Below are positions 14,225-27,012 of a stretch of 64,000 nucleotides of DNA, piece by piece. The stretch covers positions 1-64,000 of IMG/VR virus record IMGVR_UViG_3300043399_000272; one strand, 5' to 3'. Position 1 is the stretch's first letter, and every line of letters begins with the position of its first letter. The notes under the pieces are model-generated. The model had not been told where the DNA came from, made no database searches, and saw nothing but the letters and a program-made list of their open reading frames with translations. Made by a program: the position numbers and the translations under genes.

Positions 14225-14225
14225 G

Positions 14226-14399: not shown

Positions 14400-14417
14400 A
14401 ACAGTATTTATGATATT

Positions 14418-14680: not shown

Positions 14681-14693
14681 GATAAATATATTT

Positions 14694-14858
14694 ATGTATA
14701 CATACGATGCTATTACAAAAACCGGGTTACATATTCATTTATCAATGAACGAGAACGCAGATTGTTACATCCTAGTATACGATTTGTATACCTATGATAT
14801 TGAAATGAAATTCTTTACAGACCAAGAGGCTGCTAAAAGATTTATCAATTCTCTATAA
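14694..14858 (+). CDS. small hypothetical protein (MYTYDAITK...)
   Basis: Read by hand; TAAATA upstream. Confidence 0.5.
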   Translation: MYTYDAITKTGLHIHLSMNENADCYILVYDLYTYDIEMKFFTDQEAAKRFINSL

Positions 14859-14860
14859 TA

Positions 14861-15286: not shown

Positions 15287-15333
15287 AATAGTCAGAATTA
15301 TATATCGCTTGACGATGTTTGTCAAATATAAAT

Positions 15334-15433
15334 TGGTGCCCCTAGCAGGACTCGAACCTGCACACGCTGGCTTATCTGGCCAGTGCTTTGACGGAGTATA
15401 AGGCCGCTTCTTTACCAATTAAGCTATAGGGGC
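15334..15433 (-). tRNA. tRNA-like RNA with a TAT loop plus an extra GAT-loop arm
   Basis: Normal acceptor, D and T arms; loops CTTATAC and CAGATAA. Confidence 0.6.
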
Positions 15434-15445
15434 AATAAATACAAC

Positions 15446-15640
15446 ATGAACCGAACAGACGCTATTAAACTAGTAGAAGAATTGTTAGAGTTATATGCTA
15501 ACAAAAACTACGGTTCGGCTCAGATGGTAGCCATATATCAGCGAGGTTATCTCACAGGAGTACTGGCTGATCTAATCCGTTTAGATTTCTACGCAGAACA
15601 CAAAATCAGGCAGAAAATTGAGGAGCGTAGAAAAAAATAA
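15446..15640 (+). CDS. hypothetical protein
   Basis: TAAATA 4 nt upstream of the ATG. Confidence 0.65.
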   Translation: MNRTDAIKLVEELLELYANKNYGSAQMVAIYQRGYLTGVLADLIRLDFYAEHKIRQKIEERRKK

Positions 15641-15644
15641 TATT

Positions 15645-15718
15645 TGGCATCCCCCCAGGGATTCGAACCCCGACCAAGGGTTTTGGAGACCCGTATGCTG
15701 CCGTTACACTAGGGAGAT
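15645..15718 (-). tRNA. tRNA-Trp(CCA)
   Basis: Cloverleaf, G73. Confidence 0.9.
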
Positions 15719-15725
15719 ATCATCT

Positions 15726-15815
15726 TGGTGGAAGCGGTGAGATTCGAACTCACGGGACTCGTAAAAGACCGACGGTTTTCAAGACCGTTGCGTTAAACCA
15801 CTCTGCCACGCTTCC
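15726..15815 (-). tRNA. tRNA-Ser(TGA)
   Basis: Long V arm. Confidence 0.9.
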
Positions 15816-15816
15816 A

Positions 15817-15999
15817 TTAAGTTTTTTTATCAATACTATTACCTTTATCAGGAGTTCTCTCTACTACACCGTGTCGAGTGTACACCTCACATGTAATAAC
15901 TTTTTTACCTGTTACAGGATTTTGTATTGTCTTGTAAATTCTTGTTTGTATAGAATCTCTTACATAGTTTACAAGATGTTGAACACTGGTTACTATCAT
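15817..15999 (-). CDS. hypothetical protein
   Basis: TAAATA upstream. Confidence 0.55.
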   Translation of the reverse strand: MIVTSVQHLVNYVRDSIQTRIYKTIQNPVTGKKVITCEVYTRHGVVERTPDKGNSIDKKT

Positions 16000-16013
16000 A
16001 GATAATATTTATT

Positions 16014-16092
16014 TACCATATAGAAACACACTAGTACCCTACTGATTCCTGCTAGCGGTTTGTTTCAGACCGTAATGTGTTTTTATATGGTA
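16014..16092 (-). repeat. long-stem element L1 (18-bp inverted repeat)
   Basis: TACCATATAGAAACACAC...ATGTGTTTTTATATGGTA; overlaps the tRNA-Lys CCA. Confidence 0.7.
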
Positions 16093-16164
16093 GACGCTGT
16101 GGGATTCGAACCCACGACTCTCGGATTAAAAGTCCGATACTCTAGCCAACTGAGTTAAGCGTCC
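16088..16164 (-). tRNA. tRNA-Lys(TTT)
   Basis: Canonical cloverleaf. Confidence 0.95.
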
Positions 16165-16170
16165 ATGAAT

Positions 16171-16245
16171 TGGTCCCAGTGCTGAGATTCGAACTCAGTT
16201 CTCTCGGCTTAAGAGGCCGGACTTCACCGTCAAAGTTTCTCTGGG
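16171..16245 (-). tRNA. tRNA-Lys(CTT), atypical
   Basis: Cloverleaf with an atypical D region and an acceptor mismatch. Confidence 0.75.
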
Positions 16246-16272
16246 ATAGTACGTATTATAACTTGATTTTAC

Positions 16273-16346
16273 GTGCCATCCCTAGACCAATACATGAACG
16301 TCTAAGAATGACACTAACGTTTACCTCGTTTCATGTCAATCTCCTT
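16273..16346 (-). other. mini-ORF MKRGKR-UAG followed by a 15-bp hairpin
   Basis: AAGGAG SD, ATG at 16334, TAG at 16314-16316, stem 16300-16314 / 16273-16287. Confidence 0.55.
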
Positions 16347-16370
16347 AAAAAAATGTAAACTGAATTATTG

Positions 16371-16433
16371 TCAAAACTTTCGTAGGACAATGTACAACAT
16401 CACAAAAAGAACAATTATAACTATGATTGCCAT
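16371..16433 (-). CDS. 20-aa hydrophobic peptide (MAIIVIIVLFVMLYIVLRKF)
   Basis: AAGGAG SD; single TM-like segment. Confidence 0.5.
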   Translation of the reverse strand: MAIIVIIVLFVMLYIVLRKF

Positions 16434-16454
16434 ATCATTCTCCTTGTTAGTGTT

Positions 16455-16529
16455 TGGAGGTCAGGGTAGGAATTTAACCTACCTAATACGGGTTTGCAAT
16501 CCGTCGCATAAACGATCTGCCACCTGACC
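16455..16529 (-). tRNA. tRNA-Cys(GCA)
   Basis: Cloverleaf, U73, atypical T loop TTAAATT. Confidence 0.85.
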
Positions 16530-16538
16530 ATAAATTCT

Positions 16539-16632
16539 TGGCAGAGAGTGAGGGATTCGAACCCTCGGTGCTAGTTTTTGCTAGCACGCTTTCTTAGCAG
16601 GAAAGTGATTTAAGCCTCTCATCCAACTCTCT
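16539..16632 (-). tRNA. tRNA-Ser(GCT)
   Basis: Long V arm, G73. Confidence 0.9.
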
Positions 16633-16637
16633 ATAAA

Positions 16638-16811
16638 ACCATAAATTAGTGTACTTGGGTTGGCAGACTGTAAACAGACATTACCTTTCTATTATTGTAA
16701 TGTCATAGTGGTTGTACGTTTGCAACCATACAACCACCGGAGTCTGGCAGATATATTAATTGATTCAAAATATTACTATGTATATTAAAACCAAGTACAC
16801 TAACTTATGGT
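16638..16811 (-). repeat. long-stem element L2 (~21-bp inverted repeat)
   Basis: ACCATAAATTAGTGTACTTGG...CCAAGTACACTAACTTATGGT. Confidence 0.7.
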
Positions 16812-16884
16812 GCGCCCACTAGGACTTGAACCTAGGACCAATGGATTATGAGTCCACTGCTCTGACCAACTGAGCTATAGGCGC
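16808..16884 (-). tRNA. tRNA-Ile2/Met(CAT)
   Basis: Loop CTCATAA; C4 and C5 in the acceptor suggest Ile2. Confidence 0.85.
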
Positions 16885-16894
16885 ACTTGTTCAA

Positions 16895-17077
16895 ACCATA
16901 TTATAATACACTCCCAATGCATGTCAAGCACTGTAACTTTGTAGTATACCTTAAGCCAGAGTTTCGAACCTCTGAGATATAGCACTAGTCAAAAGCGACC
17001 TTTCGATCCTTTAAAAACTCTTGACTCCACGGGCAAGCTAGGTCCCCCGATATGACAAGAATGTACTATAATATGGT
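16895..17077 (-). repeat. long-stem element L3 (19-bp inverted repeat)
   Basis: ACCATATTATAATACACTC...GAATGTACTATAATATGGT. Confidence 0.7.
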
Positions 17078-17158
17078 GCGCCTAGCCGGAATCGAACCAG
17101 CACGACCGAAGTCGGGAGATTTTAAGTCTCCTGTGTCTACCTATTTCACCATAGGCGC
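17074..17158 (-). tRNA. tRNA-Leu(TAA)
   Basis: Long V arm. Confidence 0.9.
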
Positions 17159-17397
17159 AAAATTGTTAAACAAATTTTTAAAGAACAGACGATAGTATAT
17201 ATCATCTATTATTTGTTGTCAATGAATTTGTGAGCCTGACGCCTCCCTCATTCATCAGCATTTTACCCTTGATATTAAGCCGGCAGGGTTAGAGGTACGT
17301 AGTTCTAGTTGTTACTTGTTTGCTACTAGGATAATTAGTCCCAACTCACAAGGATTTCGAGGCCCTTGCTTTCCCAACATCTACACTCACAAAACTT

Positions 17398-17474
17398 TGG
17401 CGATGCGTACCGGGCTCGAACCGGTGACCACTTGCGTGACAGGCAAGTATTCTAACCAACTGAACTAACGCACC
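17398..17474 (-). tRNA. tRNA-Asp(GTC)
   Basis: Canonical, G73. Confidence 0.95.
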
Positions 17475-17580
17475 ATTATAAAAATCGAAACCAGTACACA
17501 TGGTAGCTAATTTGTGCTTGCACTGCACTCAAGGCAGTGAACAGTCGCCACTCTGTCTTTCCTCTGATTTCAAAAACTTT

Positions 17581-17859
17581 GAAGGATTACACGGCGTTAA
17601 ACTGTCAGCCTATGCTCGTTTAACTTCTGTCCTTCGGCAGCTTGACCGCTGACAATACTTTTTCTTACCCTACTGGACCGACTTACCTTTTGAGCATCGT
17701 TGCTTTCGCAAAGCCCCCGCGCTCCGGCAGGGGTCGGTTTCCGTCTACTCTAGTACTTGTTATTGTCTTAGTATTTGGACGCTCTCCTTTGCACCTGATC
17801 TGTGGGAGATTAAGCAACTGACTTATCCAATCAGTCTAATCAGTCGCTACGATTATTCT
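17581..17859 (-). ncRNA. putative ~280-nt structured RNA
   Basis: GC-richer intergenic stretch with several long-range complementarities and GNRA-like loops. Confidence 0.45.
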
Positions 17860-17946
17860 TGGTGGAGACGACTGGAGTCGAACCAGTAGTGCCTTTCGGG
17901 CGGCGGATTTACAGTCCACTGGGGTTACCAATTTTCCTACATCTCC
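17860..17946 (-). tRNA. tRNA-Tyr(GTA)
   Basis: Long V arm. Confidence 0.9.
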
Positions 17947-17952
17947 ATAATT

Positions 17953-18027
17953 TGGAAGCGCCACGGGGAGTCGAACCCCGCTTCTCAGGATGAAAACCTG
18001 ATGTCCTAACCGATAGACGATGGCGCC
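17953..18027 (-). tRNA. tRNA-Glu(TTC)
   Basis: Cloverleaf. Confidence 0.9.
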
Positions 18028-18047
18028 ATGAATTTGTTTTTATTATT

Positions 18048-18164
18048 AATCACTATATGAAAACACACTTGACAAAACGTGCCTCCCTATTTTGTCGATA
18101 GGTTCCAACGTGAGGATCAAGTACGGTTCGGCGTACCACGATAGTGTGTTTACATATAGTGATT
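18048..18164 (-). repeat. long-stem element L4 (22-bp inverted repeat)
   Basis: AATCACTATATGAAAACACACT...AGTGTGTTTACATATAGTGATT. Confidence 0.7.
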
Positions 18165-18309
18165 GCTTCACAGCAATTTATATGTTGGATAACTTTTTAA
18201 AGAACCTTAGTGATAAGCAAGATTGCTTTCTCACTGTCAATACAAGTATTGTAGCACCGACTTGATTATTTGTCAAATCTTTTTTGTGTAATACTTGTGT
18301 ATTAACATT

Positions 18310-18384
18310 TGGTCCGGCGTAGAGGAATCGAACCTCTATCTATGGCTTAGAAGGCCACTGTTCTATCCGTTGAACTAACGCCAG
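18310..18384 (-). tRNA. tRNA-Arg(TCT)
   Basis: Cloverleaf. Confidence 0.9.
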
Positions 18385-18451
18385 ATAATAGAGATATTAT
18401 ACTTCCTCAAAGAAAAAATGTCAAGTCTTTTTAAGAACTTGACATTTTGAT

Positions 18452-18528
18452 TGGCTCCCCGTCGTGGGCTCGAACCACGGACATTCTGATTAACAGTCAG
18501 ACGCATCTACCAACTGTGCTAACGGGGA
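18452..18528 (-). tRNA. tRNA-Asn(GTT)
   Basis: Cloverleaf, G73. Confidence 0.95.
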
Positions 18529-18535
18529 ATAAACT

Positions 18536-18611
18536 TGGTGCTGGATGTCGGGTTCGAACTGACGACCTTTCGCTTACAAGGCGAGTGCTCTACCAACTGA
18601 GCTAATCCAGC
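18536..18611 (-). tRNA. tRNA-Thr(TGT)
   Basis: Canonical cloverleaf. Confidence 0.95.
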
Positions 18612-18679
18612 TACTGAAATTATTTATATAGAGTGTATCACCGCGATAATTTTTTGTCAACTATCGCGGTGATATCGTC

Positions 18680-19240
18680 CTATGAAAGCAAGATTCTGCT
18701 ATGCTTAGGAACACCTGATAGCAGGTATTCCATTTGGTCAGCACGGATCGTGCGGTTTTGTAGAATCATGTTTTCATAGTGGTTAGGTTCATAAGGAACA
18801 TATAGCAATTCAAGGCCAGCTTCTTTTAGAGTCTTATGACCCTTCTTGCTGTTACATTCTTTACATGCAGTAACCACGTTCATCCAAGTGTTTTCGCCAC
18901 CACGTGCCCGAGGGATAATATGGTCACGACTTAGATTTGTATGGTTAACAAAGTGCCCGCCGCAATATGCACAAACATGTCGGTCACGACCGAACAATGT
19001 TCGGTTGCTTAATGCAACATGACTATGCTTATAAGGGTTGAATCCATGACCCTTGATAGCGATGATACTAGGTGTTTCTAGGTACGACATTGTGCCGTCG
19101 TTTTGAATACCTCCGCGGTACTGTGCGACAACATCACCCATACTCCATGCTACTGAGTTAGTAGCCCAGTATGAAATTGCGTCATCAGTGGAGATCCACT
19201 GCCGGGGAACTCCTGAAATGTCAAGTGCTAGAACAGCCAT
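18680..19240 (-). CDS. HNH endonuclease (McrA-like)
   Basis: RDRHVCAYCG...DHIIPRARGG...NVVTACKECNSKK; AGGAG SD. Confidence 0.9.
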   Translation of the reverse strand: MAVLALDISGVPRQWISTDDAISYWATNSVAWSMGDVVAQYRGGIQNDGTMSYLETPSIIAIKGHGFNPYKHSHVALSNRTLFGRDRHVCAYCGGHFVNHTNLSRDHIIPRARGGENTWMNVVTACKECNSKKGHKTLKEAGLELLYVPYEPNHYENMILQNRTIRADQMEYLLSGVPKHSRILLS

Positions 19241-19286
19241 GCTATACTCCTTCTCTGTTACTGTCTACATGTATTTAGATCCTGTT

Positions 19287-19363
19287 TGGAGGGACATGAG
19301 GGATTTGAACCCCCGACCTTTGGTTTCGAAGACCAAGACTCTTCCGAACTGAGTTAATGTCCC
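19287..19363 (-). tRNA. tRNA-Arg(TCG)
   Basis: Loop CTTCGAA. Confidence 0.9.
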
Positions 19364-19404
19364 ATATATTAATTATACAACAAATACCATTATTTGTCAA
19401 AAAC

Positions 19405-19487
19405 TGGTACCCCCTCTCGGGCTCGAACCGAGAAATTACACTCCTCTGTTTGAGAGAGGCGACTTTACCAAATTTGTCCAAGGGGGC
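19405..19487 (-). tRNA. tRNA-Leu(CAA), second copy
   Basis: Loop CTCAAAC, intermediate V arm. Confidence 0.8.
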
Positions 19488-19490
19488 ATT

Positions 19491-19566
19491 TGGTGCCAAA
19501 GACTGGGATCGAACCAGTGACACACGGATTTTCAATCCGCTGCTCTACCATCTGAGCTACATTGGC
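19491..19566 (-). tRNA. tRNA-Phe(GAA)
   Basis: Canonical cloverleaf. Confidence 0.95.
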
Positions 19567-19567
19567 G

Positions 19568-19741
19568 TTACTTGGGTTCAGGAATCTTCTTTAGTGATTC
19601 TTTTCTTACAAGACAATCACGTTGCGTTCCTAAACGAAAAACTCTCAAGTATTCGACACCATCGATCATCTGAATATCTTTGGTGTCTTTGCAATAAAAT
19701 TTCTCCCTATTACGGAGATTCTCAAAGTAAATAGTTTTCAT
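19568..19741 (-). CDS. small hypothetical protein (MKTIYFENLRN...)
   Basis: Read by hand; AAGGAG SD. Confidence 0.65.
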   Translation of the reverse strand: MKTIYFENLRNREKFYCKDTKDIQMIDGVEYLRVFRLGTQRDCLVRKESLKKIPEPK

Positions 19742-19755
19742 TTTAGTCTCCTTAT

Positions 19756-19830
19756 TGGTATCTCTGCCCAGAGTTGAACTGAGATTTATTCTTTAGGAGA
19801 GAATTGTTCTATCCATTGAACTACAGAGAT
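19756..19830 (-). tRNA. tRNA-Arg(CCT)
   Basis: Loop CTCCTAA. Confidence 0.85.
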
Positions 19831-19833
19831 ATG

Positions 19834-20208
19834 TTATCTTGTTACTTTTGCTCTGGCTGCTACCATGTCTTCAAACGAACCTTTTTCCATCACGTTCGTG
19901 TATGTGTCAGTCAGGCCACTAGCATGGTCTACTACTCTGTTATCACATTCATGGTACGTTCTGATTCTCTCAGTGCCTGCTTGGTATCTTTCAGTGTCCT
20001 CATGAAAATGAGCCTGAACTCTACTCAGACAAGTAATGTATGCTTGACGTTTGTTATCTTCACGACTACGACTATTCGTGCCGTTCGCAGTTATTCCAGT
20101 TGGCTCATGTATACAGCGGCAACAGTTTTGATGTTTGTTGCGATGCTGGCCACCTTTGCCAGTTCCAGAAAACCATTCATATCTAAATTGATCCTCAGTG
20201 ACTTTCAT
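19834..20208 (-). CDS. stand-alone GGQ peptidyl-tRNA hydrolase (RF-1 domain; ArfB/PrfH-like)
   Basis: SGTGKGGQHRNK, HEPTGI, SRSREDNK, ERIRTY...RVVDH. Confidence 0.85.
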   Translation of the reverse strand: MKVTEDQFRYEWFSGTGKGGQHRNKHQNCCRCIHEPTGITANGTNSRSREDNKRQAYITCLSRVQAHFHEDTERYQAGTERIRTYHECDNRVVDHASGLTDTYTNVMEKGSFEDMVAARAKVTR

Positions 20209-20233
20209 ATTGTTCTCCACTGATATTTATAAT

Positions 20234-20324
20234 TGGCAGTGAGTGAGAGATTCGAACTCTCGTGCCGTGTAATACGACCATCATCTTTCCAGGATGCGCC
20301 CTTAAGCCTCTCAGGCAACTCACT
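20234..20324 (-). tRNA. tRNA-Ser(GGA)
   Basis: Long V arm, G73. Confidence 0.9.
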
Positions 20325-20329
20325 ATGTT

Positions 20330-20405
20330 TGGTGTCCAGTACTGGGATCGAACCAGTGACCTCTACCGTGTCAAGGTAGCGTTCATACCGCTGAACTAAC
20401 CGGAC
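20330..20405 (-). tRNA. tRNA-Val(GAC)
   Basis: Canonical cloverleaf. Confidence 0.95.
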
Positions 20406-20470
20406 ATATAAACTACTAAAGTACATGATTCTACTACTTTGAAAGTACTAAGTACTTCAAAGGAAATATC

Positions 20471-20740
20471 ATGAACGATCAACATCTATTACGCACATAC
20501 CTTAACATCATCAATGAGGCAGTTGGTGCCATCAACGAGAAGTGGGGCAAGTCTACTGTAGTTAGCCCAGAAGAAAAAGGCAAATATGCTGGCAAATCTA
20601 AAGCTGAATTACTTAAACAATATAATGCTCTTAAAGCAAGCGGCCCTCATAAGAAAGGTTCTCCCGAGTACGGAAGAATGCGTGAATTAGCATTTGCTAT
20701 TCGTGCAAAAAGTAATTGGGGTAAAGTTAAAGATGAATAA
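20471..20740 (+). CDS. hypothetical protein
   Basis: AAGGA SD; N-terminal LRTYLNIINE motif. Confidence 0.75.
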   Translation: MNDQHLLRTYLNIINEAVGAINEKWGKSTVVSPEEKGKYAGKSKAELLKQYNALKASGPHKKGSPEYGRMRELAFAIRAKSNWGKVKDE

Positions 20741-20948
20741 TGTCATGCGTAACTTTATCAACATACTTAATGAGACACATATATCATATGGTCACAAAAT
20801 AGATAAATCTTCTGCTAACTACACTGACCACGGGGTCGGCGGCGAAGTATGTCACAATTGTAGACATTTCCGTGCACCACATAGATGTGAAATAGTTGAC
20901 GGATACATCGAACCTGGTGGTTGGTGTAGATACTTTGAAGAAGAATAA
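20733..20948 (+). CDS. HiPIP-like iron-sulfur protein
   Basis: Y...CHNCRHF...C...V.G.I...GWC..F pattern; overlapping start. Confidence 0.65.
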   Translation: MNNVMRNFINILNETHISYGHKIDKSSANYTDHGVGGEVCHNCRHFRAPHRCEIVDGYIEPGGWCRYFEEE

Positions 20949-21066
20949 AACGGGATACTTTTCTTGACGAATGCTCTACCTAATGAGCTAATCTGGCATG
21001 AAGCCAAATGTTGGAATCGAACCAACTACCTATCGTTTGATAGAATTTTGCTGTATGTATCCCTAA
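20949..21066 (-). ncRNA. CAGCA-handle RNA 5: circularly permuted tRNA, YrlA-like
   Basis: GGGAUAC-AUACAGCAA, T arm, acceptor closed by a UUCAU loop, D arm, GUAUCCC. Confidence 0.8.
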
Positions 21067-21068
21067 AC

Positions 21069-21146
21069 TGGTCTGGGTAGCAGGATTTGAACCTGCAGCC
21101 TCGAAGTTCCAAGCCTCGCCGTCTACCAAGTTGACAATATACCCAG
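21069..21146 (-). tRNA. tRNA-Pro(TGG), second copy, atypical
   Basis: Loop CTTGGAA (A37). Confidence 0.8.
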
Positions 21147-21153
21147 ATATTTT

Positions 21154-21519
21154 TTACAAACTAGAAATTGTTTTTCTTTTATATTTTCTAGCGTATTCTA
21201 TGCTACCCTTCATTGCGGCAGCACAACAAAATTTGTGATCTTTCCTAAAGATCCATTCATTCAACTTGAATGATTTCAATACTCTATCACCATTCCACCA
21301 TCCACGTTGAGTTTCAATGTAACCTTCTTGTTCAAGTTGGTCTCTCAATTTAGTGAATTCGTCATGGTCTTTATTACTGACACTAACTGCCTTGTCATAA
21401 CCCTTAAGAATTTTGATAAGGTCTTCATGTGTAGGATTGGTGCGGTCTTTAATAAAATCATGTTCAATCCTCACAGACACATCGGTAATGTATTGCTCGT
21501 CAATGACAAATTGTTTCAT
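21154..21519 (-). CDS. hypothetical protein
   Basis: AAGGA SD. Confidence 0.7.
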   Translation of the reverse strand: MKQFVIDEQYITDVSVRIEHDFIKDRTNPTHEDLIKILKGYDKAVSVSNKDHDEFTKLRDQLEQEGYIETQRGWWNGDRVLKSFKLNEWIFRKDHKFCCAAAMKGSIEYARKYKRKTISSL

Positions 21520-21685
21520 AACATTTCCTTATAGATTGGGAGCCTAGCTATCTGTCGTTACACAGCCTCACTAGATTGTCTCGTATACAAGAGTTTATAC
21601 TACCTTACTAATCTACTGATGTGTCACATACCAGCACAGTATGCTAGATTAGAAGGGACTCAATCGTACCGTCTATCCCATAAAT

Positions 21686-21760
21686 TGGTGCTCCTTGAAG
21701 GAATCGAACCTCCACCCCTGGATTACAAAACCAGTCCACTACCATTATGATTAAAAGAGC
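21686..21760 (-). tRNA. tRNA-Thr(TGT), second copy, atypical
   Basis: Loop TTTGTAA. Confidence 0.8.
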
Positions 21761-21765
21761 AATAT

Positions 21766-21888
21766 TGGTGCCGCCGCTAGGATTCGAACCTAGATAACCC
21801 CCTCGACATGGTTAAAGAAAATATGCTGAACGTACTCTAAAACAGAGTCACCCTTTTATAAGGCGTCCTACCGTTAGACGACAGCGGC
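21766..21888 (-). ncRNA. CAGCA-handle RNA 6: tRNA body with the handle in place of the anticodon loop
   Basis: GCCGCUG/CGGCGGC-ACCA, D and T arms; insert ACUCUG-UUU-UAGAGU-ACGUUCAGCAU. Confidence 0.75.
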
Positions 21889-21896
21889 ATTAAATT

Positions 21897-21972
21897 TGGT
21901 GCAGCCAGTGGACTCGAACCACTGCGGGAATCTAGAATGCGGGGGACATGCCCCCTACCCCTCCATTACTGC
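21897..21972 (-). ncRNA. tRNA-like RNA with acceptor and T arm only
   Basis: UUCGAGU T loop and ACCA end; no D arm; GGGGG-CAUGU-CCCCC hairpin. Confidence 0.55.
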
Positions 21973-21977
21973 AAAAC

Positions 21978-22052
21978 TGGCGCCGTAGAAGGGAATCGAA
22001 CCCTCATAGGACGGATAGACAATCCGTTGCATTACCAGTCTACCACTACGGC
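21978..22052 (-). tRNA. tRNA-Asp(GTC), second copy, atypical
   Basis: Loop TTGTCTA (U37), G73. Confidence 0.8.
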
Positions 22053-22062
22053 ATTAATTGAA

Positions 22063-22128
22063 TTTAGGGTGACAGTGCGTTAGTGGCCGATACTGTCATT
22101 CACCACTCGCTTCTACGCATACCCTAAA
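22063..22128 (-). ncRNA. putative compact pseudoknot RNA
   Basis: Four complementary segment pairs in 66 nt. Confidence 0.45.
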
Positions 22129-22132
22129 ATAT

Positions 22133-22207
22133 TGGCTCCGGTGGCTGGGATCGAACCAACGACCAATTGATTAACAGTCAACTGCACTACCGCTGTGCTA
22201 CACCGGA
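22133..22207 (-). tRNA. tRNA-Asn(GTT), second copy
   Basis: Cloverleaf. Confidence 0.9.
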
Positions 22208-22208
22208 A

Positions 22209-22595
22209 TTAAATTTTACAGAAAATACCTTTGAGAATTTTACTTGCCGGTTCAAAGTGTTCTTCCATGATATGATTTGCCATACCATATGCTGTTGTTC
22301 CCATGTCTATGTAATATCTAGGACTGGGCCAACGATTTTGTTTGAACGGATAACTATGAATAAGCAAGCATTCATCACCGACTTTTAACAAGTCTTTCTG
22401 TTTACCAGTACTTATTGCAGTAAGCATTTCAATTGCAACTGCATTGTTACCGATATCAGTTCTTTGAAAGTTATTTGCCATCAAGTGAACCACATAGGCT
22501 TCTACCTCGTGTTCTAGTATGATGCCATTAACACCTTCACTCTCTACTACTAGGTCGTAGCATGATTTAACATAATCAAACCAGTGCTTGCTCAT
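22209..22595 (-). CDS. hypothetical protein
   Basis: VGDECL motif; TAAATA upstream. Confidence 0.75.
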   Translation of the reverse strand: MSKHWFDYVKSCYDLVVESEGVNGIILEHEVEAYVVHLMANNFQRTDIGNNAVAIEMLTAISTGKQKDLLKVGDECLLIHSYPFKQNRWPSPRYYIDMGTTAYGMANHIMEEHFEPASKILKGIFCKI

Positions 22596-22609
22596 AGTAG
22601 TATTTATTC

Positions 22610-22686
22610 TGGTGCCGCCACATGGATTTGAACCATGGACCCCCGCCTTATCAAGACGGTGCTCTAACCAACTGAGCTATGGAGGC
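22610..22686 (-). tRNA. tRNA-Ile(GAT)
   Basis: Cloverleaf. Confidence 0.9.
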
Positions 22687-22691
22687 ATTAC

Positions 22692-22765
22692 TGGTTCCTC
22701 CACCAGGTTACGATCCTGGGTCTCACGATTATCAGTCGTGGGCTCTTCCATTGAGCTATAGAGGA
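22692..22765 (-). tRNA. tRNA-Ile(GAT), second copy, atypical T loop
   Basis: T loop ATCGTAA. Confidence 0.8.
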
Positions 22766-22766
22766 A

Positions 22767-23111
22767 TTAACTTACATAACCCCAGCGATTATTCTTCTGG
22801 GATTTAATTCTTGTTTCATCAAATTCAATTAAGCGAGTTAAGTTAACTGTGCCTGCATGAATCTTTCTATGACAATGCGAACACAACATTACACACTTCT
22901 TAGCCTCTGCCATAAGATTCTCCCATGACATAATTTTGCTAGACAGTGAGAATTCCTTGTGTTCACTGTTCAAATGATGAAAGTCGTAAACGATTGGATC
23001 ATCCTGTAAATCACAGACCGAACATCTATTATCAAACCCTTCTACAAGTTTAACCTTAGTGTTCTTTCTCCACTCTTTTACTTTTTCGTATCTTCTTTCT
23101 TTCGGTGTCAT
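22767..23111 (-). CDS. HNH endonuclease
   Basis: CSVC...DFHH...KCVMLCSHCHRKIH. Confidence 0.85.
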   Translation of the reverse strand: MTPKERRYEKVKEWRKNTKVKLVEGFDNRCSVCDLQDDPIVYDFHHLNSEHKEFSLSSKIMSWENLMAEAKKCVMLCSHCHRKIHAGTVNLTRLIEFDETRIKSQKNNRWGYVS

Positions 23112-23178
23112 AATATTTCCTCAGTTATCTTGTATTTATAACTGATTCACAAAAAATGACACCGGGTATAAACTTCTT

Positions 23179-23256
23179 TGGGGTGGATAGTCGGGATCGA
23201 ACCGACGCAATACCGGAATCACAACCCGGGGCCTTAACCACTTGGCTATACCCACC
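23179..23256 (-). tRNA. tRNA-His(GTG)
   Basis: C73 and encoded G-1. Confidence 0.9.
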
Positions 23257-23267
23257 ACAAAGAAGTC

Positions 23268-23342
23268 TGGTGGAAGTAGTAAGATTCGAACTTACGATAG
23301 GCACCGTATGAAGATGCTGCATTACCACTTTGCTATACTTCC
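23268..23342 (-). tRNA. tRNA-Met(CAT)
   Basis: Loop TTCATAC. Confidence 0.85.
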
Positions 23343-23351
23343 ATTATGAAT

Positions 23352-23423
23352 CAATTTGAAATACACTATTTTTCACCCCATCAGTAGAGTGACCCATCAG
23401 TAGGCGTAGTGTATTTCAAATTG
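23352..23423 (-). repeat. long-stem element L5 (17-bp perfect inverted repeat, internal 12-nt direct repeat)
   Basis: CAATTTGAAATACACTA...TAGTGTATTTCAAATTG; ACCCATCAGTAG x2 inside. Confidence 0.7.
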
Positions 23424-23495
23424 GTGCGGGGTAAGGGAGTCGAACCCTTGACTAAACGTTGGCAACGTTTGATTTTACCGTTAAACTAACCACGC
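23422..23495 (-). tRNA. tRNA-Gly(GCC), second copy, A73
   Basis: Cloverleaf with an atypical discriminator. Confidence 0.8.
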
Positions 23496-23587
23496 ATTAA
23501 ACTGGGCCCTTGAGGTCACCGTCGAAAGTGACATTACCAACTATTAACGGGTTGCGCGCCAGCCGCGTCAAACTCAAGGATAAAACT

Positions 23588-23663
23588 TGGTACCTGAGAC
23601 TGGACTCGAACCAGTATCGCTCACTGTGTAAAAGTGACGTATGACCTCTCTACGCACTCAGGT
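23588..23663 (-). tRNA. tRNA-Val(TAC), second copy
   Basis: Loop TTTACAC. Confidence 0.8.
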
Positions 23664-23670
23664 ATAATCT

Positions 23671-23748
23671 TGGAACACCGGGTCAGATTCGAACTGACGG
23701 TTTTGCGGATTTGCAATCCACTGCATTGGGCCTCTCTGCCACCGGTGC
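23671..23748 (-). tRNA. tRNA-Cys(GCA), second copy
   Basis: U73. Confidence 0.85.
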
Positions 23749-23755
23749 ATAAATT

Positions 23756-23831
23756 TGGTGCTGATACCGAGAGTCGAACTCGGGACCTCATCATTACCAA
23801 TGATGTATTCTACCAACTGAACTATATCAGC
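23756..23831 (-). tRNA. tRNA-Thr(GGT)
   Basis: Canonical cloverleaf. Confidence 0.95.
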
Positions 23832-23833
23832 AT

Positions 23834-23899
23834 AACAGGATCGTTTTTTACGGTTTAGATTAGAAGTCTAATGTATTTTGATTGCTGAACCGATCCTAA
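23834..23899 (-). ncRNA. CAGCA-handle RNA 7 (Arg UCU-type anticodon hairpin)
   Basis: UAGGAUCG-GUUCAGCAA...UUAGA-CUUCUAA-UCUAA...CGAUCCUG. Confidence 0.75.
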
Positions 23900-23903
23900 A
23901 ACT

Positions 23904-23980
23904 TGGCGCGTCTGGCAGGATTCGAACCCACGACCCCTTGGTTCGTAGCCAAGTACTCTATCCAACTGAGCTACAGACGC
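23904..23980 (-). tRNA. tRNA-Arg(ACG)
   Basis: Canonical cloverleaf. Confidence 0.95.
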
Positions 23981-24075
23981 ATAAATTCGTGCCGCTTCTT
24001 GGGACTTGTACCCCAGTTACTCCATTCCCTTGTCGCGGCTCCGAGGGCGAGTCTGTTTTCTTCTAGCTAGAATTC

Positions 24076-24151
24076 TGGCACCCCCTGATGGACTCGAACC
24101 ACCGAATGTCGGAATCAAAATCCGATGCCTTACCAACTTGGCGAAGGAGGT
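24076..24151 (-). tRNA. tRNA-Gln(TTG)
   Basis: Loop TTTTGAT, G73. Confidence 0.9.
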
Positions 24152-24158
24152 ATAATAT

Positions 24159-24221
24159 AACAGGATGCTGGTTTGCTTTTTTCCAAATAAAAAGTTTTTT
24201 AATTTGCTGGAAGCATCCTAA
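24159..24221 (-). ncRNA. CAGCA-handle RNA 8
   Basis: UAGGAUGC-UUCCAGCAA...CUUUUU-AUUUGGA-AAAAAG...GCAUCCUG. Confidence 0.7.
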
Positions 24222-24225
24222 AACT

Positions 24226-24300
24226 TGGTGGAAGCCGAGGGAGTTGAACCCTTCTAGACAGCGATCTTGCAAGGATCACCCGTAGCCCGCTACTGCCCCC
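24226..24300 (-). tRNA. tRNA-Ala(TGC), second copy, atypical D arm
   Basis: G3:U70, A73, loop CTTGCAA. Confidence 0.75.
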
Positions 24301-24308
24301 AAATTGTA

Positions 24309-24386
24309 TGGTGTGTCCTGCAAGAATCGAACTTGCTTCTACGATTTTTCAGACCGTCGCTGAATGACCACACTAGCTCAAGACAC
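24309..24386 (-). tRNA. tRNA-Phe(GAA), second copy, atypical
   Basis: Loop CTGAAAA. Confidence 0.8.
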
Positions 24387-24390
24387 ATAT

Positions 24391-24477
24391 TGGTGGAGCC
24401 CTAAGGAATCGAACCTCTTGCCACCACCCACCTTATTATGGCTACGATTTTACAGACCGCAAGCGGGAAAGGGCTCC
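24391..24477 (-). tRNA. D-armless tRNA-Tyr(GTA)-like RNA
   Basis: Perfect acceptor stem, loop CTGTAAA, no D hairpin. Confidence 0.65.
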
Positions 24478-24487
24478 ATTAAATTGT

Positions 24488-24562
24488 TGGTATCCTGTAT
24501 GGGTTTTGATCCCATCTCACTAGTTTGAAGGACTAGCGGCCACACCAGCTGCCTCACAGGAT
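24488..24562 (-). tRNA. tRNA-Glu(TTC), second copy, atypical
   Basis: Loop CCTTCAA (C33), T loop ATCAAAA. Confidence 0.7.
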
Positions 24563-24571
24563 ATATATTGT

Positions 24572-24649
24572 TGGCAAGGGTGACTGGATTCGAACCAGTG
24601 ATGACGATTTCAAAGACCGTTGCCTTAGGCCAGACTAGGCGACACCCCA
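24572..24649 (-). tRNA. tRNA-Gln(TTG), second copy
   Basis: Loop CTTTGAA, G73. Confidence 0.85.
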
Positions 24650-24882: not shown

Positions 24883-25044
24883 TTAAAACCTTACTAGCCT
24901 TTTAAGCTGATTCAGTTTTTCATGATCCTTCTTGGCTCGCTCATACTTGTTACGTATAAGCTGCCTAACTTGTTCTTGCGACAAAGTGTGATTTTTTAAC
25001 CAATCCTTTTTGTCAGAAGAACCAGATTCTAGATCCTTTGTCAT
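24883..25044 (-). CDS. small basic protein (53 aa, MTKDLESG...)
   Basis: Read by hand; first ORF after the attenuator. Confidence 0.5.
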   Translation of the reverse strand: MTKDLESGSSDKKDWLKNHTLSQEQVRQLIRNKYERAKKDHEKLNQLKRLVRF

Positions 25045-25087
25045 TTTATGTCAAACCTTTTTGTGTTGTATTTTTACTACAGTACAT

Positions 25088-25128
25088 AAACAAAAACCCC
25101 TGGGACTTTTTAGTTTCCCAGGGGCTTC
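25088..25128 (-). terminator. intrinsic terminator of the putative attenuator
   Basis: CCCCUGGGA-loop-UCCCAGGGG-UUUUUGUUU; the 5' arm is complementary to 25175-25183. Confidence 0.85.
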
Positions 25129-25144
25129 TTAGATTCTGTTGAGA

Positions 25145-25318
25145 TTAGATTCTTGGAATCTTTTCTCCTTCTATGAAGCCCCTAGATAATCCCTGGTCAT
25201 CATTGCCACGGCAAATACTAGGTGTGTTATAACCCTCAAAGGCCCATGACATCGCGGACACTGGAGCTATTGCTCTGGTGCTCGTATGTTTCGGCAGTTG
25301 ATGGTTAAATTGTTTCAT
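25145..25318 (-). CDS. putative pan-codon leader peptide (57 aa)
   Basis: MKQFNHQLPKHTSTRAIAPVSAMSWAFEGYNTPSICRGNDDQGLSRGFIEGEKIPRI; codons 7-46 are all different. Confidence 0.7.
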   Translation of the reverse strand: MKQFNHQLPKHTSTRAIAPVSAMSWAFEGYNTPSICRGNDDQGLSRGFIEGEKIPRI

Positions 25319-25396
25319 AGTAATCTATTTAGTCCTGGTTAAAAAATTTGTCTTTTAAGTCGCCTTTTCTGCGCCTTTTGTTAATTCGATGAACGA

Positions 25397-25425
25397 AGTA
25401 TACTTGTATTTAGATTAATTGTCAA
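25397..25425 (-). promoter_or_regulatory. sigma70-type promoter at the head of the tRNA array
   Basis: TTGACA-17-TATACT; a TAAATA late-type motif also lies at 25326-25331. Confidence 0.75.
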
Positions 25426-25470: not shown

Positions 25471-27012
25471 ATGTTATTTAATCCCACCGAGTATACAACA
25501 GTTTTTCTTAGTTTTGACGAACCTAACGCTGACACCAACTATCAACACTTACTAACACTATGCCCTGGAGCATTACGTGTGCATGGCGTTAAGGGTAGTG
25601 ACACCGCTCACAAAGCAGTCGCACAAATTAGTCAAACGAAAAATGTAATTATAGTAGATGCCGACAATTTTGTCAAGCCTGATTTTTATTCTCAGACTTA
25701 CGAGATTGGCAACACCGACCTTACCTCTACTGTACTCAGCTTCACAGCACATAACAAGATAAATGGGCAACAATACGGGAATGGTGGCATCAAAGTATGG
25801 CCTGTAGAGTTGCTAAAAAGTATGAAAACGCATGAAAATTCTGATAATGCTAGTACTTTAGTAGACTTTGATTTCAGCAACTATAAACAAATGAACTATG
25901 TTGCTAGTGAGGTCAGATATGCTAGCCATAGACAAGCATGGCGTGCTGGCTTCCGTGAGGGTGTCAAACTTATGCTAGACAATGGGCAGTACCAACGTGA
26001 TATACATAACATCGACTGGCGCAACTATGACAGACTTTGGAACTGGATGCACATCGGCAGTGATGTTGAGCATGGGTACTGGGCTATACACGGAGCACGG
26101 TTTGGATGCTGGAATGCTGTTAGAAAATTTGACCTATCCAAACTACACAACTTTGAGTATTTGGACTATTTGTTTGACCTTTTCAAAGATACGAACTTTG
26201 TAGATGGTTGTGAACAATTCGGGCATCACATACAAACATTGACTAATGACAGACGTATAGGCACAGTCTACAGTCCTAGACTTAGTAAAGAGTATAGAGA
26301 ATCAGTCAAGCCCTGTTTGCGTATGCCCAATGACGAACCCTATGACATTGTGTTTATTAGCTACAACGAATTAAACGCAGACAAAAACTACCGTGAACTA
26401 ATAAAACGATTCCCGAGGGCTAAGCGAATTGACGGAGTACAGGGCATACACAATGCACACATAGAAGCAGCAAAACTATGTTCTACAGACTATTTCTGGG
26501 TCGTAGACGGTGACGCAGAAATTGTTCCCGAATTTAATTTTGATTATGTTGTCCCATTCTATGACACATTAAAAGTTAGGGTGTGGCGTGCTGAAAATCC
26601 AGTTAACGGCTTGACATATGGCTACGGAGGTGTTAAACTATTACCTAGAATAGCCACGGTTCGTATGCGTACAGATAGACCCGACATGACTACAAGTATC
26701 TGTAAGGATTACGAGCCAATCTTTGTTGTTAGTAATATAACACGTTTTGATACTGATCCATTTAATACTTGGCGAAGTGCATTTAGAGAATGTACTAAGC
26801 TAGCAAGTCAAGTAATAGACAACTCATACGAAAGTATAGAACGACTAGATATTTGGTGTTCAGTGGGTGATAATGACTACGCAATAGACGGAGCAAAAGC
26901 AGGTCGTGAGTATGGCACTTATAATAAAGACAATTTGACAGCATTAAGAAAGATAAACGACTTCATGTGGATGCGTGAACAGTATGACAGATTTTACAAA
27001 AATACCCTTTGA
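25471..27012 (+). CDS. tandem glycosyltransferase-like (GT-A, DxD) domain protein
   Basis: Two homologous halves: F.S..E.NAD, AH, VDAD/VDGD, YG.GG.K, WR..FRE. Confidence 0.75.
   Translation: MLFNPTEYTTVFLSFDEPNADTNYQHLLTLCPGALRVHGVKGSDTAHKAVAQISQTKNVIIVDADNFVKPDFYSQTYEIGNTDLTSTVLSFTAHNKINGQQYGNGGIKVWPVELLKSMKTHENSDNASTLVDFDFSNYKQMNYVASEVRYASHRQAWRAGFREGVKLMLDNGQYQRDIHNIDWRNYDRLWNWMHIGSDVEHGYWAIHGARFGCWNAVRKFDLSKLHNFEYLDYLFDLFKDTNFVDGCEQFGHHIQTLTNDRRIGTVYSPRLSKEYRESVKPCLRMPNDEPYDIVFISYNELNADKNYRELIKRFPRAKRIDGVQGIHNAHIEAAKLCSTDYFWVVDGDAEIVPEFNFDYVVPFYDTLKVRVWRAENPVNGLTYGYGGVKLLPRIATVRMRTDRPDMTTSICKDYEPIFVVSNITRFDTDPFNTWRSAFRECTKLASQVIDNSYESIERLDIWCSVGDNDYAIDGAKAGREYGTYNKDNLTALRKINDFMWMREQYDRFYKNTL

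What the first reader, a model, noticed from the sequence alone, without database searches (positions are those of the whole stretch)
25088..25425. Pan-codon leader-peptide attenuator at the head of the phage tRNA array
Seen, minus strand, in order: a TTGACA-17-TATACT promoter (25425-25397); a 57-codon ORF missing from the ORF track (25318-25145); a strong terminator (CCCCUGGGA/UCCCAGGGG + UUUUUGUUU); then the tRNA array. The ORF encodes all 20 amino acids with 44 different sense codons, including all four Ala, all three Ile and five Ser codons. Codons 7-46 are 40 consecutive codons with no repeat; by hand this is about 4e-8 for uniform draws from 61 codons, uncorrected for choosing the window. 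The run ends at AGG GGC UUC (25183-25175), a perfect 9-nt complement of GAAGCCCCU, the terminator 5' arm. A short CCUAG/CUAGG pairing offers a possible 1:2 helix. Established: trp/his/thr attenuators use runs of one or two amino acids' codons. Inference: this is the inverse design. Loss of almost any tRNA (host anticodon nucleases, starvation) would stall the ribosome, free the antiterminator and switch on the phage tRNA set. Limits: no close SD (a TAAATA motif 7 nt upstream suggests leaderless initiation), 17 codons are absent, and internal promoters exist further down the array.
Basis: partly seen in the sequence, partly recalled or inferred. Interest (0 to 1): 0.93.

Follow-up and report, generated by a model that had tools for sequence, protein, structure and literature searches.

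The report
All-amino-acid leader attenuator before phage tRNAs
A family of uncultivated giant phages places, in front of its tRNA gene array, a short reading frame that uses all 20 amino acids and unusually varied codons and is wired to a transcription stop signal, so it looks like a switch that tests the cell's whole tRNA supply; this has not been tested at the bench.

Summary
The minus strand carries a promoter (25425-25397), a 57-codon ORF (25318-25145), a terminator (25124-25088) and then the tRNA array. The ORF has 44 distinct codons, all 20 amino acids and a 40-codon run without a repeat. The next longest such run in the window is 30.

The unit recurs in about 70 distinct IMG/VR phage contigs and 178 protein clusters. 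It always sits at the 5' head of a same-strand tRNA array. No GenBank phage has it, and no paper I found describes it.

Peptide sequence drifts, but composition does not: 55 of 61 peptides, and 101 of 114 further ones, hold all 20 amino acids. A tree-based null expects 13.4 +/- 5.0 of 61. The neighbouring small ORF has only 14-18. Single Cys, Trp and His residues move position. Codon repeats are avoided.

A segment near the ORF's 3' end pairs with the terminator's 5' arm and flank. It is kept in two reading frames and the pairing shows compensatory changes.

Best reading: a ribosome-mediated attenuator whose leader samples every amino acid, so a stall at almost any codon allows read-through.

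A second promoter and a conserved 53-aa ORF lie between terminator and tRNAs. The 40-codon run itself is not conserved. Function is untested.

The parts
25648..25676 (-). Upstream tandem promoter P0 (TTGACA-17-TATAAT, 12 of 12). It points towards the leader and lies antisense to the 5' end of the 523-aa GT2-like gene.
   Evidence: Further consensus promoters upstream of P1 occur in 33 of 67 family loci.
25397..25425 (-). Promoter P1 (TTGACA-17-TATACT). The start site is inferred near 25390.
   Evidence: A promoter with 10-12 of 12 matches lies at the same place in about 67 of 70 relatives.
25326..25340 (-). Invariant 5'UTR 15-mer AACCAGGACTAAATA, 7 nt before the ATG. Its AGGA is 14 nt from the ATG. 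Role unknown.
   Evidence: It is also visible in members found by peptide profile only. Ordinary genes of the window have a Shine-Dalgarno motif 5-9 nt from the ATG.
25145..25318 (-). Leader ORF: 57 codons plus TAA, 44 distinct codons, all 20 amino acids.
   Evidence: The frame is open in 61 of 61 relatives, while the other two frames carry more than 4 stops each. No Pfam or PHROG hit. No predicted fold: pLDDT 59, pTM 0.12.
25187..25318 (-). Proposed sensing track: codons 1-44, which already contain all 20 amino acids and lie upstream of element 2.
   Evidence: All 20 amino acids lie upstream of element 2 in all 55 peptides that have full coverage.
25169..25186 (-). Element 2, the 5' strand of the antiterminator (TCTAGGGGCTTCATAGAA, codons 45-50).
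   Evidence: Best duplex partner of the terminator arm plus flank in every relative. The motif is kept in two reading frames. GCTTC/GAAGC here versus GTTTC/GAAAC elsewhere is a compensatory change.
25141..25167 (-). Spacer hairpin H between elements 2 and 3. The stop codon (25147-25145) lies in its 3' strand.
   Evidence: Folds. In long forms 85% of cells are paired and two of its pairs change on both sides.
25117..25133 (-). Element 3: the terminator's 5' flank plus 5' arm, which pairs with element 2.
25088..25124 (-). Intrinsic terminator: 9-bp stem CCCCUGGGA/UCCCAGGGG, 10-nt loop, U tract 25096-25088.
   Evidence: Hairpin energy -17.5 kcal/mol. In relatives 98.9% of cells are paired and 3 pairs covary.
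25026..25054 (-). Promoter P2 (TTGACA-17-TAGAAT), directly after the terminator.
   Evidence: Present at 10-12 of 12 matches in about 52 of 68 relatives and absent in about 16.
24883..25044 (-). ORF2, a conserved 53-aa protein of unknown function. Its ATG lies between the -35 and -10 of P2, so only read-through transcripts could encode all of it.
   Evidence: Homologues occur in 45 of 66 loci. They have 14-18 distinct amino acids.
8642..24649 (-). Array of 46 tRNA genes covering all 20 amino acids. The first is tRNA-Gln(UUG) at 24649-24572.
   Evidence: One more tRNA at 24562-24491 was found by Rfam only.

Best explanation
This is a ribosome-mediated transcription attenuator at the entrance of the phage's tRNA array.

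Proposed mechanism:
- Strong early promoters (P1, often with tandem partners) transcribe a 44-58 codon leader ORF.
- A segment near the ORF's 3' end (element 2) can pair with the 5' arm and flank of the intrinsic terminator (element 3). That pairing prevents the terminator hairpin (3:4).
- A ribosome that translates the leader without delay reaches the stop codon. There it covers element 2 (short forms) or occupies the roughly 30-nt spacer between elements 2 and 3 (long forms, as in this window). The terminator then forms and transcription ends after about 300 nt.
- A ribosome held up anywhere in the first 40 or so codons leaves element 2 free. The 2:3 helix forms, and RNA polymerase reads on into ORF2 and the tRNA genes.
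- The leader is kept by selection to contain every amino acid, to use both codon boxes of Ser, Arg and Leu, and to avoid repeating codons. A shortage of almost any aminoacyl-tRNA could therefore cause the stall. The phage tRNAs made by read-through would relieve it, closing a feedback loop.

Shown here: the conserved architecture, the mutually exclusive pairings with compensatory changes, selection for amino-acid coverage and codon diversity, and the position at the head of the arrays.

Inferred: that the ORF is translated, the direction and size of the response, and the physiological trigger (codon-usage mismatch, host shut-off, or anticodon nucleases).
For: 1. Conserved unit. About 70 distinct phage contigs carry it, and it heads the tRNA array: 49 of 50 loci have same-strand tRNAs downstream and 0 of 68 have any upstream.

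2. Amino-acid coverage.
- All 20 amino acids occur in 55 of 61 peptides, against 13.4 +/- 5.0 (maximum 27 in 400 runs) under a tree-based independent-column null.
- An independent profile search gave 114 new peptides, of which 101 have all 20.
- Background windows of the same length reach all 20 in only 2-9% of cases.
- The neighbouring ORF2 shows no excess (z -0.14) and has 14-18 kinds.
- Cys, Trp and His occur exactly once in 56-58 of 61 peptides, yet their positions shift.

3. Codon diversity.
- Same-amino-acid pairs within a peptide share a codon in 24.2% of cases, against 30.6 +/- 1.6% in the tree null.
- Distinct codons per length are 0.747 against 0.677 +/- 0.011.
- All 17 subfamily representatives have z > 0.
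- Both Leu codon boxes occur in 58 of 61 peptides against 40 +/- 8.

4. All 20 amino acids are encoded upstream of element 2.

5. The competing pairing.
- The best partner of the terminator arm plus flank is always at the ORF's 3' end. Mean duplex energy is -20.4 against -11.6 kcal/mol in dinucleotide shuffles.
- Short forms have 5 pairs with changes on both sides, matched by 0-1 of 500 shuffles.
- Long forms have 92.5% of cells paired, against at most 51% when the register is slid.
- The motif is kept in two reading frames, Gly-Pro-Gly and Ala-Arg-Gly.
- In short forms it runs through the stop codon.

6. Terminator. It is 98.9% paired, with covariation.

7. Peptide. It drifts (codon-position entropies 0.99, 0.90, 1.18) while the frame stays open in 61 of 61. 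No fold is predicted.
Against: - No direct evidence of translation, termination or read-through. The one metatranscriptome contig that covers a relative's leader is at low depth and runs past both promoter and terminator.
- There is no Shine-Dalgarno motif at normal spacing.
- Promoter P2 directly after the terminator, in about three quarters of members including this window, gives the tRNAs a route that bypasses the switch. The regulated share may therefore be modest, or the main target may be ORF2.
- The compensatory changes lie in the flank part of the 2:3 helix. That part alone could coexist with the terminator. The arm part is supported by conserved complementarity and frame-independence, not by covariation.
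- In long forms a ribosome at the stop codon does not cover element 2.
- A conserved 1:2 helix is not established.
- The conserved Ser-Ile-Arg-Gly peptide motif is not explained by a pure sensor model.
- Synonymous sites are not saturated between subfamilies (67% identical against 42% expected), so the codon-diversity tests are not fully independent across clades.
Confidence: 0.6

Rival explanations
1. An ordinary early gene for a small protein, with its own promoter and terminator. On this reading the element 2:3 pairing is a 3'-end structure that serves mRNA stability or translation termination and is not a switch, and the terminator only insulates the tRNA promoter P2 from upstream transcription.
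For: - Promoter, ORF and terminator form a complete monocistronic unit, and P2 restarts transcription right after it.
- The Ser-Ile-Arg-Gly motif is kept with synonymous variation and its Arg is invariant.
- Covariation is confined to the flank helix, which need not exclude the terminator.
Against: - It gives no reason for selection to keep all 20 amino acids while their positions move, or to avoid codon repeats. The control ORF2 shows neither trait.
- Most of the peptide drifts, and no fold is predicted.
- The G-rich motif complementary to the terminator arm is kept in two reading frames.
- The unit is found only at the head of tRNA arrays.
Confidence: 0.15
2. An attenuator that reports general translation capacity or transcription-translation coupling (ribosome availability, global elongation rate, host shut-off) rather than the supply of individual tRNAs. 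On this reading the diverse composition only makes the track an average sample of codons.
For: The architecture is the same as in the main explanation. With no ribosome on the leader, the 2:3 helix is what folds before the 3' arm is made. Any block of translation would therefore give read-through.
Against: An average sample would not need every rare amino acid present exactly once, nor relocation of Cys, Trp and His when they are lost. The two readings overlap and differ only in what selection acts on.
Confidence: 0.15
3. A structured small RNA of about 300 nt whose open frame is incidental.
For: The 5'UTR 15-mer is invariant and the terminator loop is conserved. The region is richer in G+C than the genome.
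Against: The frame is open in 61 of 61 members, with lengths of 44-58 codons, while the other frames have more than 4 stops. Composition is constrained at the amino-acid and codon level. No Rfam family matches. Most of the ORF's RNA has no conserved structure.
Confidence: 0.03
4. The 40-codon no-repeat run in this window is a chance extreme with no meaning of its own.
For: Relatives have runs of only 13-35 codons.
Against: The window's run far exceeds anything else in its 64 kb. The underlying trait, avoidance of codon repeats, holds family-wide against a tree-based null.
Confidence: 0.07

Closest known systems
Leader-peptide transcription attenuators of amino-acid operons in enterobacteria (trpL, hisL, leuL, thrL, ilvL, pheL)
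   Same: A short ORF in the 5' leader, an intrinsic terminator, and a competing upstream pairing that uses the terminator's 5' arm. The position of the lead ribosome decides which pairing forms. In short forms, a ribosome at the stop codon covers the antiterminator strand, as in trp.
   Different: - The classical leaders have 14-32 codons with runs of one to three amino acids. This one has 44-58 codons, with every amino acid present, mostly once or a few times, and codon repeats avoided.
- They control biosynthetic enzymes of a cell. This one sits before a phage tRNA array.
- A conserved 1:2 helix is not established here.
- Here a second promoter follows the terminator.
Drug- or stall-sensing leader ORFs (ermCL, catA86L, vmlR, msrD leaders) and arrest peptides (SecM, TnaC)
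   Same: A stalled ribosome on a short upstream ORF remodels the downstream RNA. A conserved peptide motif (Ser-Ile-Arg-Gly here) might act in the exit tunnel.
   Different: Those stall at one defined site in response to one ligand or force. Here the design implies many possible stall sites. An arrest function for Ser-Ile-Arg-Gly is only a lead from memory and was not tested.
T-box riboswitches
   Same: They link the tRNA charging state to read-through of a terminator through an antiterminator.
   Different: T-boxes bind one uncharged tRNA directly and have no ORF. No T-box or any other Rfam family matches here.
pyrBI / pyrE coupling attenuators
   Same: The distance between the lead ribosome and RNA polymerase sets the efficiency of the terminator.
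   Different: There a closely following ribosome prevents the terminator from forming. Here a ribosome that completes the ORF permits it.
tRNA gene clusters of large phages (T4, T5, KVP40, XacN1 and others)
   Same: A large phage-encoded tRNA set covering all amino acids, interspersed with promoters and small ORFs.
   Different: No attenuator or composition-constrained leader has been described for them, in my knowledge or in the paper searches. No sequence relative of this unit exists in 50,697 GenBank phage records.

Membership tests
Ribosome-mediated (leader-peptide) transcription attenuator | Short ORF in the 5' leader, conserved as an open frame | tested here: met
   The frame is open in 61 of 61 distinct relatives, with more than 4 stops in each other frame. 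A further 114 peptides came from a profile search.
Ribosome-mediated (leader-peptide) transcription attenuator | The ORF is actually translated | not testable with these tools
   The support is indirect: constraints at the amino-acid and codon level. There is no Shine-Dalgarno motif at normal spacing. The RNA data were uninformative.
Ribosome-mediated (leader-peptide) transcription attenuator | Intrinsic terminator between the leader ORF and the regulated genes | tested here: met
   A 9-bp G+C-rich stem plus a U tract. In relatives 98.9% of cells are paired and 3 pairs covary.
Ribosome-mediated (leader-peptide) transcription attenuator | Alternative pairing that uses the terminator's 5' arm (antiterminator) | tested here: met
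   The strongest partner lies at the ORF's 3' end in all members, with mean z -3.8 against shuffles. Compensatory changes are present and the motif is independent of reading frame. Caveat: the covariation lies in the flank part of the helix.
Ribosome-mediated (leader-peptide) transcription attenuator | A ribosome finishing the ORF masks the antiterminator strand | tested here: inconclusive
   Short forms: element 2 runs through the stop codon, so the feature is met. Long forms, including this window: element 2 ends 12-21 nt before the stop, and the ribosome would sit in the spacer between elements 2 and 3.
Ribosome-mediated (leader-peptide) transcription attenuator | Anti-antiterminator / pause helix (1:2) | tested here: inconclusive
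RNAalifold proposes AUUCGCGG with CCCGGGGA in short forms, without double changes. No such helix appears in long forms.
Ribosome-mediated (leader-peptide) transcription attenuator | Regulatory codons: a run of codons for the sensed amino acid | tested here: not met
   There are no runs. Instead every amino acid is present and codon repeats are avoided. This is the point of difference from the classical family.
Ribosome-mediated (leader-peptide) transcription attenuator | Downstream genes are functionally tied to the sensed signal | tested here: met
   A same-strand tRNA array follows in 49 of 50 loci, and none of 68 loci has a tRNA upstream.
Ribosome-mediated (leader-peptide) transcription attenuator | Read-through rises when the cognate charged tRNA is scarce | not testable with these tools
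   This needs a reporter or an in vitro assay.
T-box riboswitch or other curated RNA family | Match to an Rfam covariance model | tested here: not met
   Only tRNAs reach threshold. No leader family matches in 24400-25800, even at E up to 1.
RiPP precursor peptide (considered because a radical SAM gene lies nearby) | Conserved core or leader peptide, co-oriented or tightly linked with its modifying enzyme | tested here: not met
   The peptide is transcribed divergently from the radical SAM gene. In L006 and L007 another gene is inserted between them. The peptide sequence drifts apart from Ser-Ile-Arg-Gly. There is no family hit.

The most novel reading that the evidence does not exclude
This would be a new sensing logic for attenuation: a leader peptide kept by selection to contain every amino acid and as many different codons as possible. 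It would act as a single test track for the whole aminoacyl-tRNA pool and autoregulate a virus's own complete tRNA set. It may also gate a small protein (ORF2) that can be made only from read-through transcripts. Such a device would let a phage detect tRNA loss from any cause, including host anticodon nucleases, and respond with replacement tRNAs.
Probability: 0.5. Interest if true: 0.9.

Novelty: new variant of a known kind. Interest (0 to 1): 0.86.

Why it matters
Attenuation by leader peptides is a textbook mechanism, and every known case senses one or a few amino acids. A leader that samples all twenty would be the inverse design.

It would be the first regulatory element assigned to phage tRNA arrays, whose control is largely unknown. 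It would link phage tRNA genes to sensing of tRNA depletion, a current topic in phage defence and counter-defence.

It also shows a rare kind of selection: on the composition of a peptide rather than on its sequence. That gives a simple signature (20-amino-acid coverage plus avoidance of codon repeats in a short ORF before a terminator) that can be searched for elsewhere.

The element is compact, about 340 nt, and directly testable in a cell-free system. It could also serve as a general reporter of tRNA or translation stress.

Tried and rejected
- GenBank phages. Megablast, blastn and tblastn of the unit and peptide against 50,697 records gave no relatives. The only neighbour-gene relative, Ralstonia phage RsoM2USA, has no tRNA array at that locus.
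- Curated families. Rfam, Pfam and PHROGs gave nothing for the leader or ORF2.
- RNA evidence. Runs X3, X4 and X6 are probably DNA. Metatranscriptome X14 has one low-depth 430-nt contig of a 95-99% relative that extends beyond both promoter and terminator, so it says nothing about transcript ends.
- First antiterminator count on the long forms. It used the wrong register: 52% of cells paired, against 83% when slid by one. I redid it with the majority bulge.
- Pairing of the 5'UTR CCAGG with the terminator arm CCUGG. It appears in some minimum-energy folds. I rejected it because members with altered arms (L047, L102, L127) do not compensate.
- Relocation of Cys, Trp and His alone. By itself this is not strong evidence, because a second copy is expected by chance in about 60% of 50-residue peptides. 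I replaced that argument with the tree simulation and the ORF2 control.
- Match between the leader's codons and the Watson-Crick codons of the phage's own anticodons. By hand count 24 of 32 are present, against about 23 expected, so there is no signal.
- Host. The only hint is one family member on a contig binned into a Neisseriaceae MAG.
- Names.

Full report
**What is in the window.** On the minus strand I find, in order:
- a 12-of-12 consensus promoter (25676-25648);
- a 5'UTR of about 72 nt;
- an ATG ORF of 57 codons (25318-25145);
- a hairpin CCCCUGGGA / 10-nt loop / UCCCAGGGG followed by UUUUUGUUU (25124-25088);
- a third consensus promoter P2 (25054-25026);
- a 53-aa ORF (25044-24883);
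- 46 tRNA genes from 24649 down to 8642 that cover all 20 amino acids.

The window is the first 64 kb of a 260-kb JGI freshwater-type metagenome contig, also filed in IMG/VR.

**The codon statistic.**
- The ORF has 44 distinct sense codons, all 20 amino acids and no repeat in codons 7-46.
- The uniform-draw probability of 3.8e-8 is reproduced.
- The next longest no-repeat run in any stop-free segment of the six frames is 30.
- The effect is specific to this frame.
- Given the peptide, random synonymous choice gives 35.6 +/- 2.2 distinct codons.

**Relatives.**
- Loci found through the neighbouring 523-aa gene show the same order of parts. They share an invariant 15-mer AACCAGGACTAAATA just before the ATG and a nearly identical terminator.
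- A scan of IMG/VR for the 15-mer returned 120 loci. About 80 carry the terminator at the right distance. These give 71 distinct units and 61 distinct peptides of 44-58 residues.
- The unit is followed by a same-strand tRNA array in 49 of 50 loci with enough sequence. It is never preceded by a tRNA, in 68 loci.
- A profile search of 5.8 billion proteins found 178 clusters. All are unnamed, and 114 are new to the first set.
- No GenBank phage has the unit, and four full-text searches found no description of it.

**Composition, not sequence, is conserved.**
- The peptides are only 10-44% identical to the window's outside its own subgroup. Variation by codon position is nearly flat, with entropies of 0.99, 0.90 and 1.18. 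Yet the frame is open in all 61.
- 55 of 61 peptides contain all 20 amino acids and the rest contain 19. Among the 114 new peptides, 101 have 20. Several of the 19s are 5'-truncated gene calls.
- Windows of the same length in the family's long proteins reach 20 in only 2-9% of cases.
- Cys, Trp and His occur exactly once in 56-58 of 61 peptides, but at different places in different lineages.
- Shared ancestry could mimic this, so I simulated each alignment column independently on the family tree, with its own residue profile and fitted rate. That null gives 13.4 +/- 5.0 full-coverage peptides (maximum 27 in 400 runs) against 55 observed.
- The same test on the adjacent ORF2 family gives z = -0.14. 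Those proteins have 14-18 kinds of residue.

**Codons.**
- Within a peptide, two positions with the same amino acid share a codon in 24.2% of cases. The tree-based codon null gives 30.6 +/- 1.6% (minimum 26.0), and the family's overall codon usage predicts about 42%.
- Distinct codons per length are 0.747 against 0.677 +/- 0.011.
- All 17 subfamily representatives exceed expectation.
- Both Leu codon boxes occur in 58 of 61 peptides, against 40 +/- 8 in the null.
- The 40-codon run is not conserved: relatives have runs of 13-35. The window is therefore the extreme of a selected trait.
- Synonymous sites are not saturated between subfamilies, so these tests are not fully independent across clades.

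**RNA switch.**
- In every member, the strongest partner of the terminator's 5' arm plus 9-nt flank lies at the 3' end of the ORF. Duplex energies are -13 to -28 kcal/mol, against -12 to -18 for the terminator hairpin. The mean is -20.4, against -11.6 in dinucleotide shuffles.
- In short forms (44-48 codons) this element 2 runs through the stop codon. Its pairs show compensatory change: 5 pairs and 34 cells, matched by 0-1 of 500 shuffles, with slid controls far lower.
- In long forms 92.5% of cells pair, against at most 51% when slid. The window's GCUUC:GAAGC replaces GUUUC:GAAAC of the others. The 2-3 spacer forms its own covarying hairpin, which holds the stop codon.
- The G-rich core of element 2 is kept in two reading frames, Gly-Pro-Gly in 19 members and Ala-Arg-Gly in 18. 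The constraint is therefore on the RNA.
- The terminator itself is 98.9% paired, with covariation.
- Before the 3' arm exists, the 2:3 helix is part of the minimum-energy fold in 6 of the 8 members folded, including the window.
- All 20 amino acids lie upstream of element 2 in all 55 full-coverage peptides.

**Mechanism.** These parts fit classical attenuation. A ribosome that completes the leader blocks 2:3, and the terminator forms. A ribosome delayed in the first 40 or so codons leaves element 2 free, and polymerase reads on. The composition constraint implies that the delay may come from any amino acid or tRNA. This last step, like translation itself, is inferred.

**Open points.**
- No Shine-Dalgarno motif sits at normal spacing. 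AGGA is 14 nt from the ATG, against 5-9 nt for other genes of the window. The role of the invariant 15-mer is unknown.
- P2 follows the terminator in about three quarters of members, so tRNAs are not wholly dependent on read-through.
- ORF2 starts inside P2 and can be encoded whole only by read-through RNA. It may be the tightly gated product.
- Tandem promoters upstream of P1 occur in 33 of 67 loci.
- The Ser-Ile-Arg-Gly motif is conserved at the peptide level. In short forms its RNA may form a 1:2 helix.
- In long forms the ribosome at the stop codon sits between elements 2 and 3 rather than on element 2.
- The covariation lies in the flank part of the 2:3 helix, not in the arm part.
- RNA-seq data were uninformative.
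- The peptide has no predicted fold.

**Verdict.** The finding is real. Its core interpretation passes every comparative test available here. It is a new variant of leader-peptide attenuation that awaits a bench test.

Noticed in passing
window 24883-25044 (minus) and 25026-25054: ORF2 is a conserved 48-58 aa Lys/Glu-rich protein (motif W.KNH.LS.EQ..LI..K..RA). Its ATG lies between the -35 and -10 hexamers of promoter P2. The -10 stays TAnAAT while the encoded residues change, so ORF2 can be encoded whole only by transcripts that read through the terminator.
   Followed up: partly
window 25326-25340 (minus): The 5'UTR 15-mer AACCAGGACTAAATA is invariant across the family, including members found by peptide profile only. 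Its AGGA is 14 nt from the ATG, which is unlike the ribosome-binding sites of the window's ordinary genes. Function unknown.
   Followed up: partly
window 25648-25676 (minus): A perfect consensus promoter (TTGACA-17-TATAAT) lies 250 nt upstream of P1, antisense to the start of the 523-aa GT2-like gene. Similar tandem promoters occur in 33 of 67 related loci.
   Followed up: partly
window 15334-15433 (minus): A 100-nt tRNA gene that ARAGORN calls with a four-base anticodon (ctcc). Rfam scores it 57.6 bits as a tRNA. It may have an intron or a long variable arm, or it may be a frameshift-suppressor-like tRNA.
   Followed up: no
window 24491-24562 (minus): A further tRNA found by Rfam in E-value mode (36.6 bits) that ARAGORN does not list. 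It would be the second gene of the array.
   Followed up: no
window 25441-27946 (plus): Transcribed divergently from the leader are a 523-aa protein with a weak glycosyltransferase family 2 match, which looks like an internal duplication (two similar halves), and a radical SAM protein. In L006 and L007 another gene is inserted between the leader and this pair.
   Followed up: partly
L130 (CANEUJ010000032.1, 13.5-kb contig): A complete copy of the unit plus 12 tRNA genes sits on a contig binned into a Neisseriaceae metagenome-assembled genome. This is probably a mis-binned phage contig and is only a weak hint at a betaproteobacterial host.
   Followed up: partly
window 25145-25318 and family ORFs: The leader is richer in G+C than the genome (50% in the no-repeat run and 43% as a family mean, against 38% for the window). 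It uses codons that are rare in the phage's own genes (GCC, GCG, CGC, CGG, AGG, GGG, CTG, ACG, CCG) far more often than the long ORFs do.
   Followed up: partly
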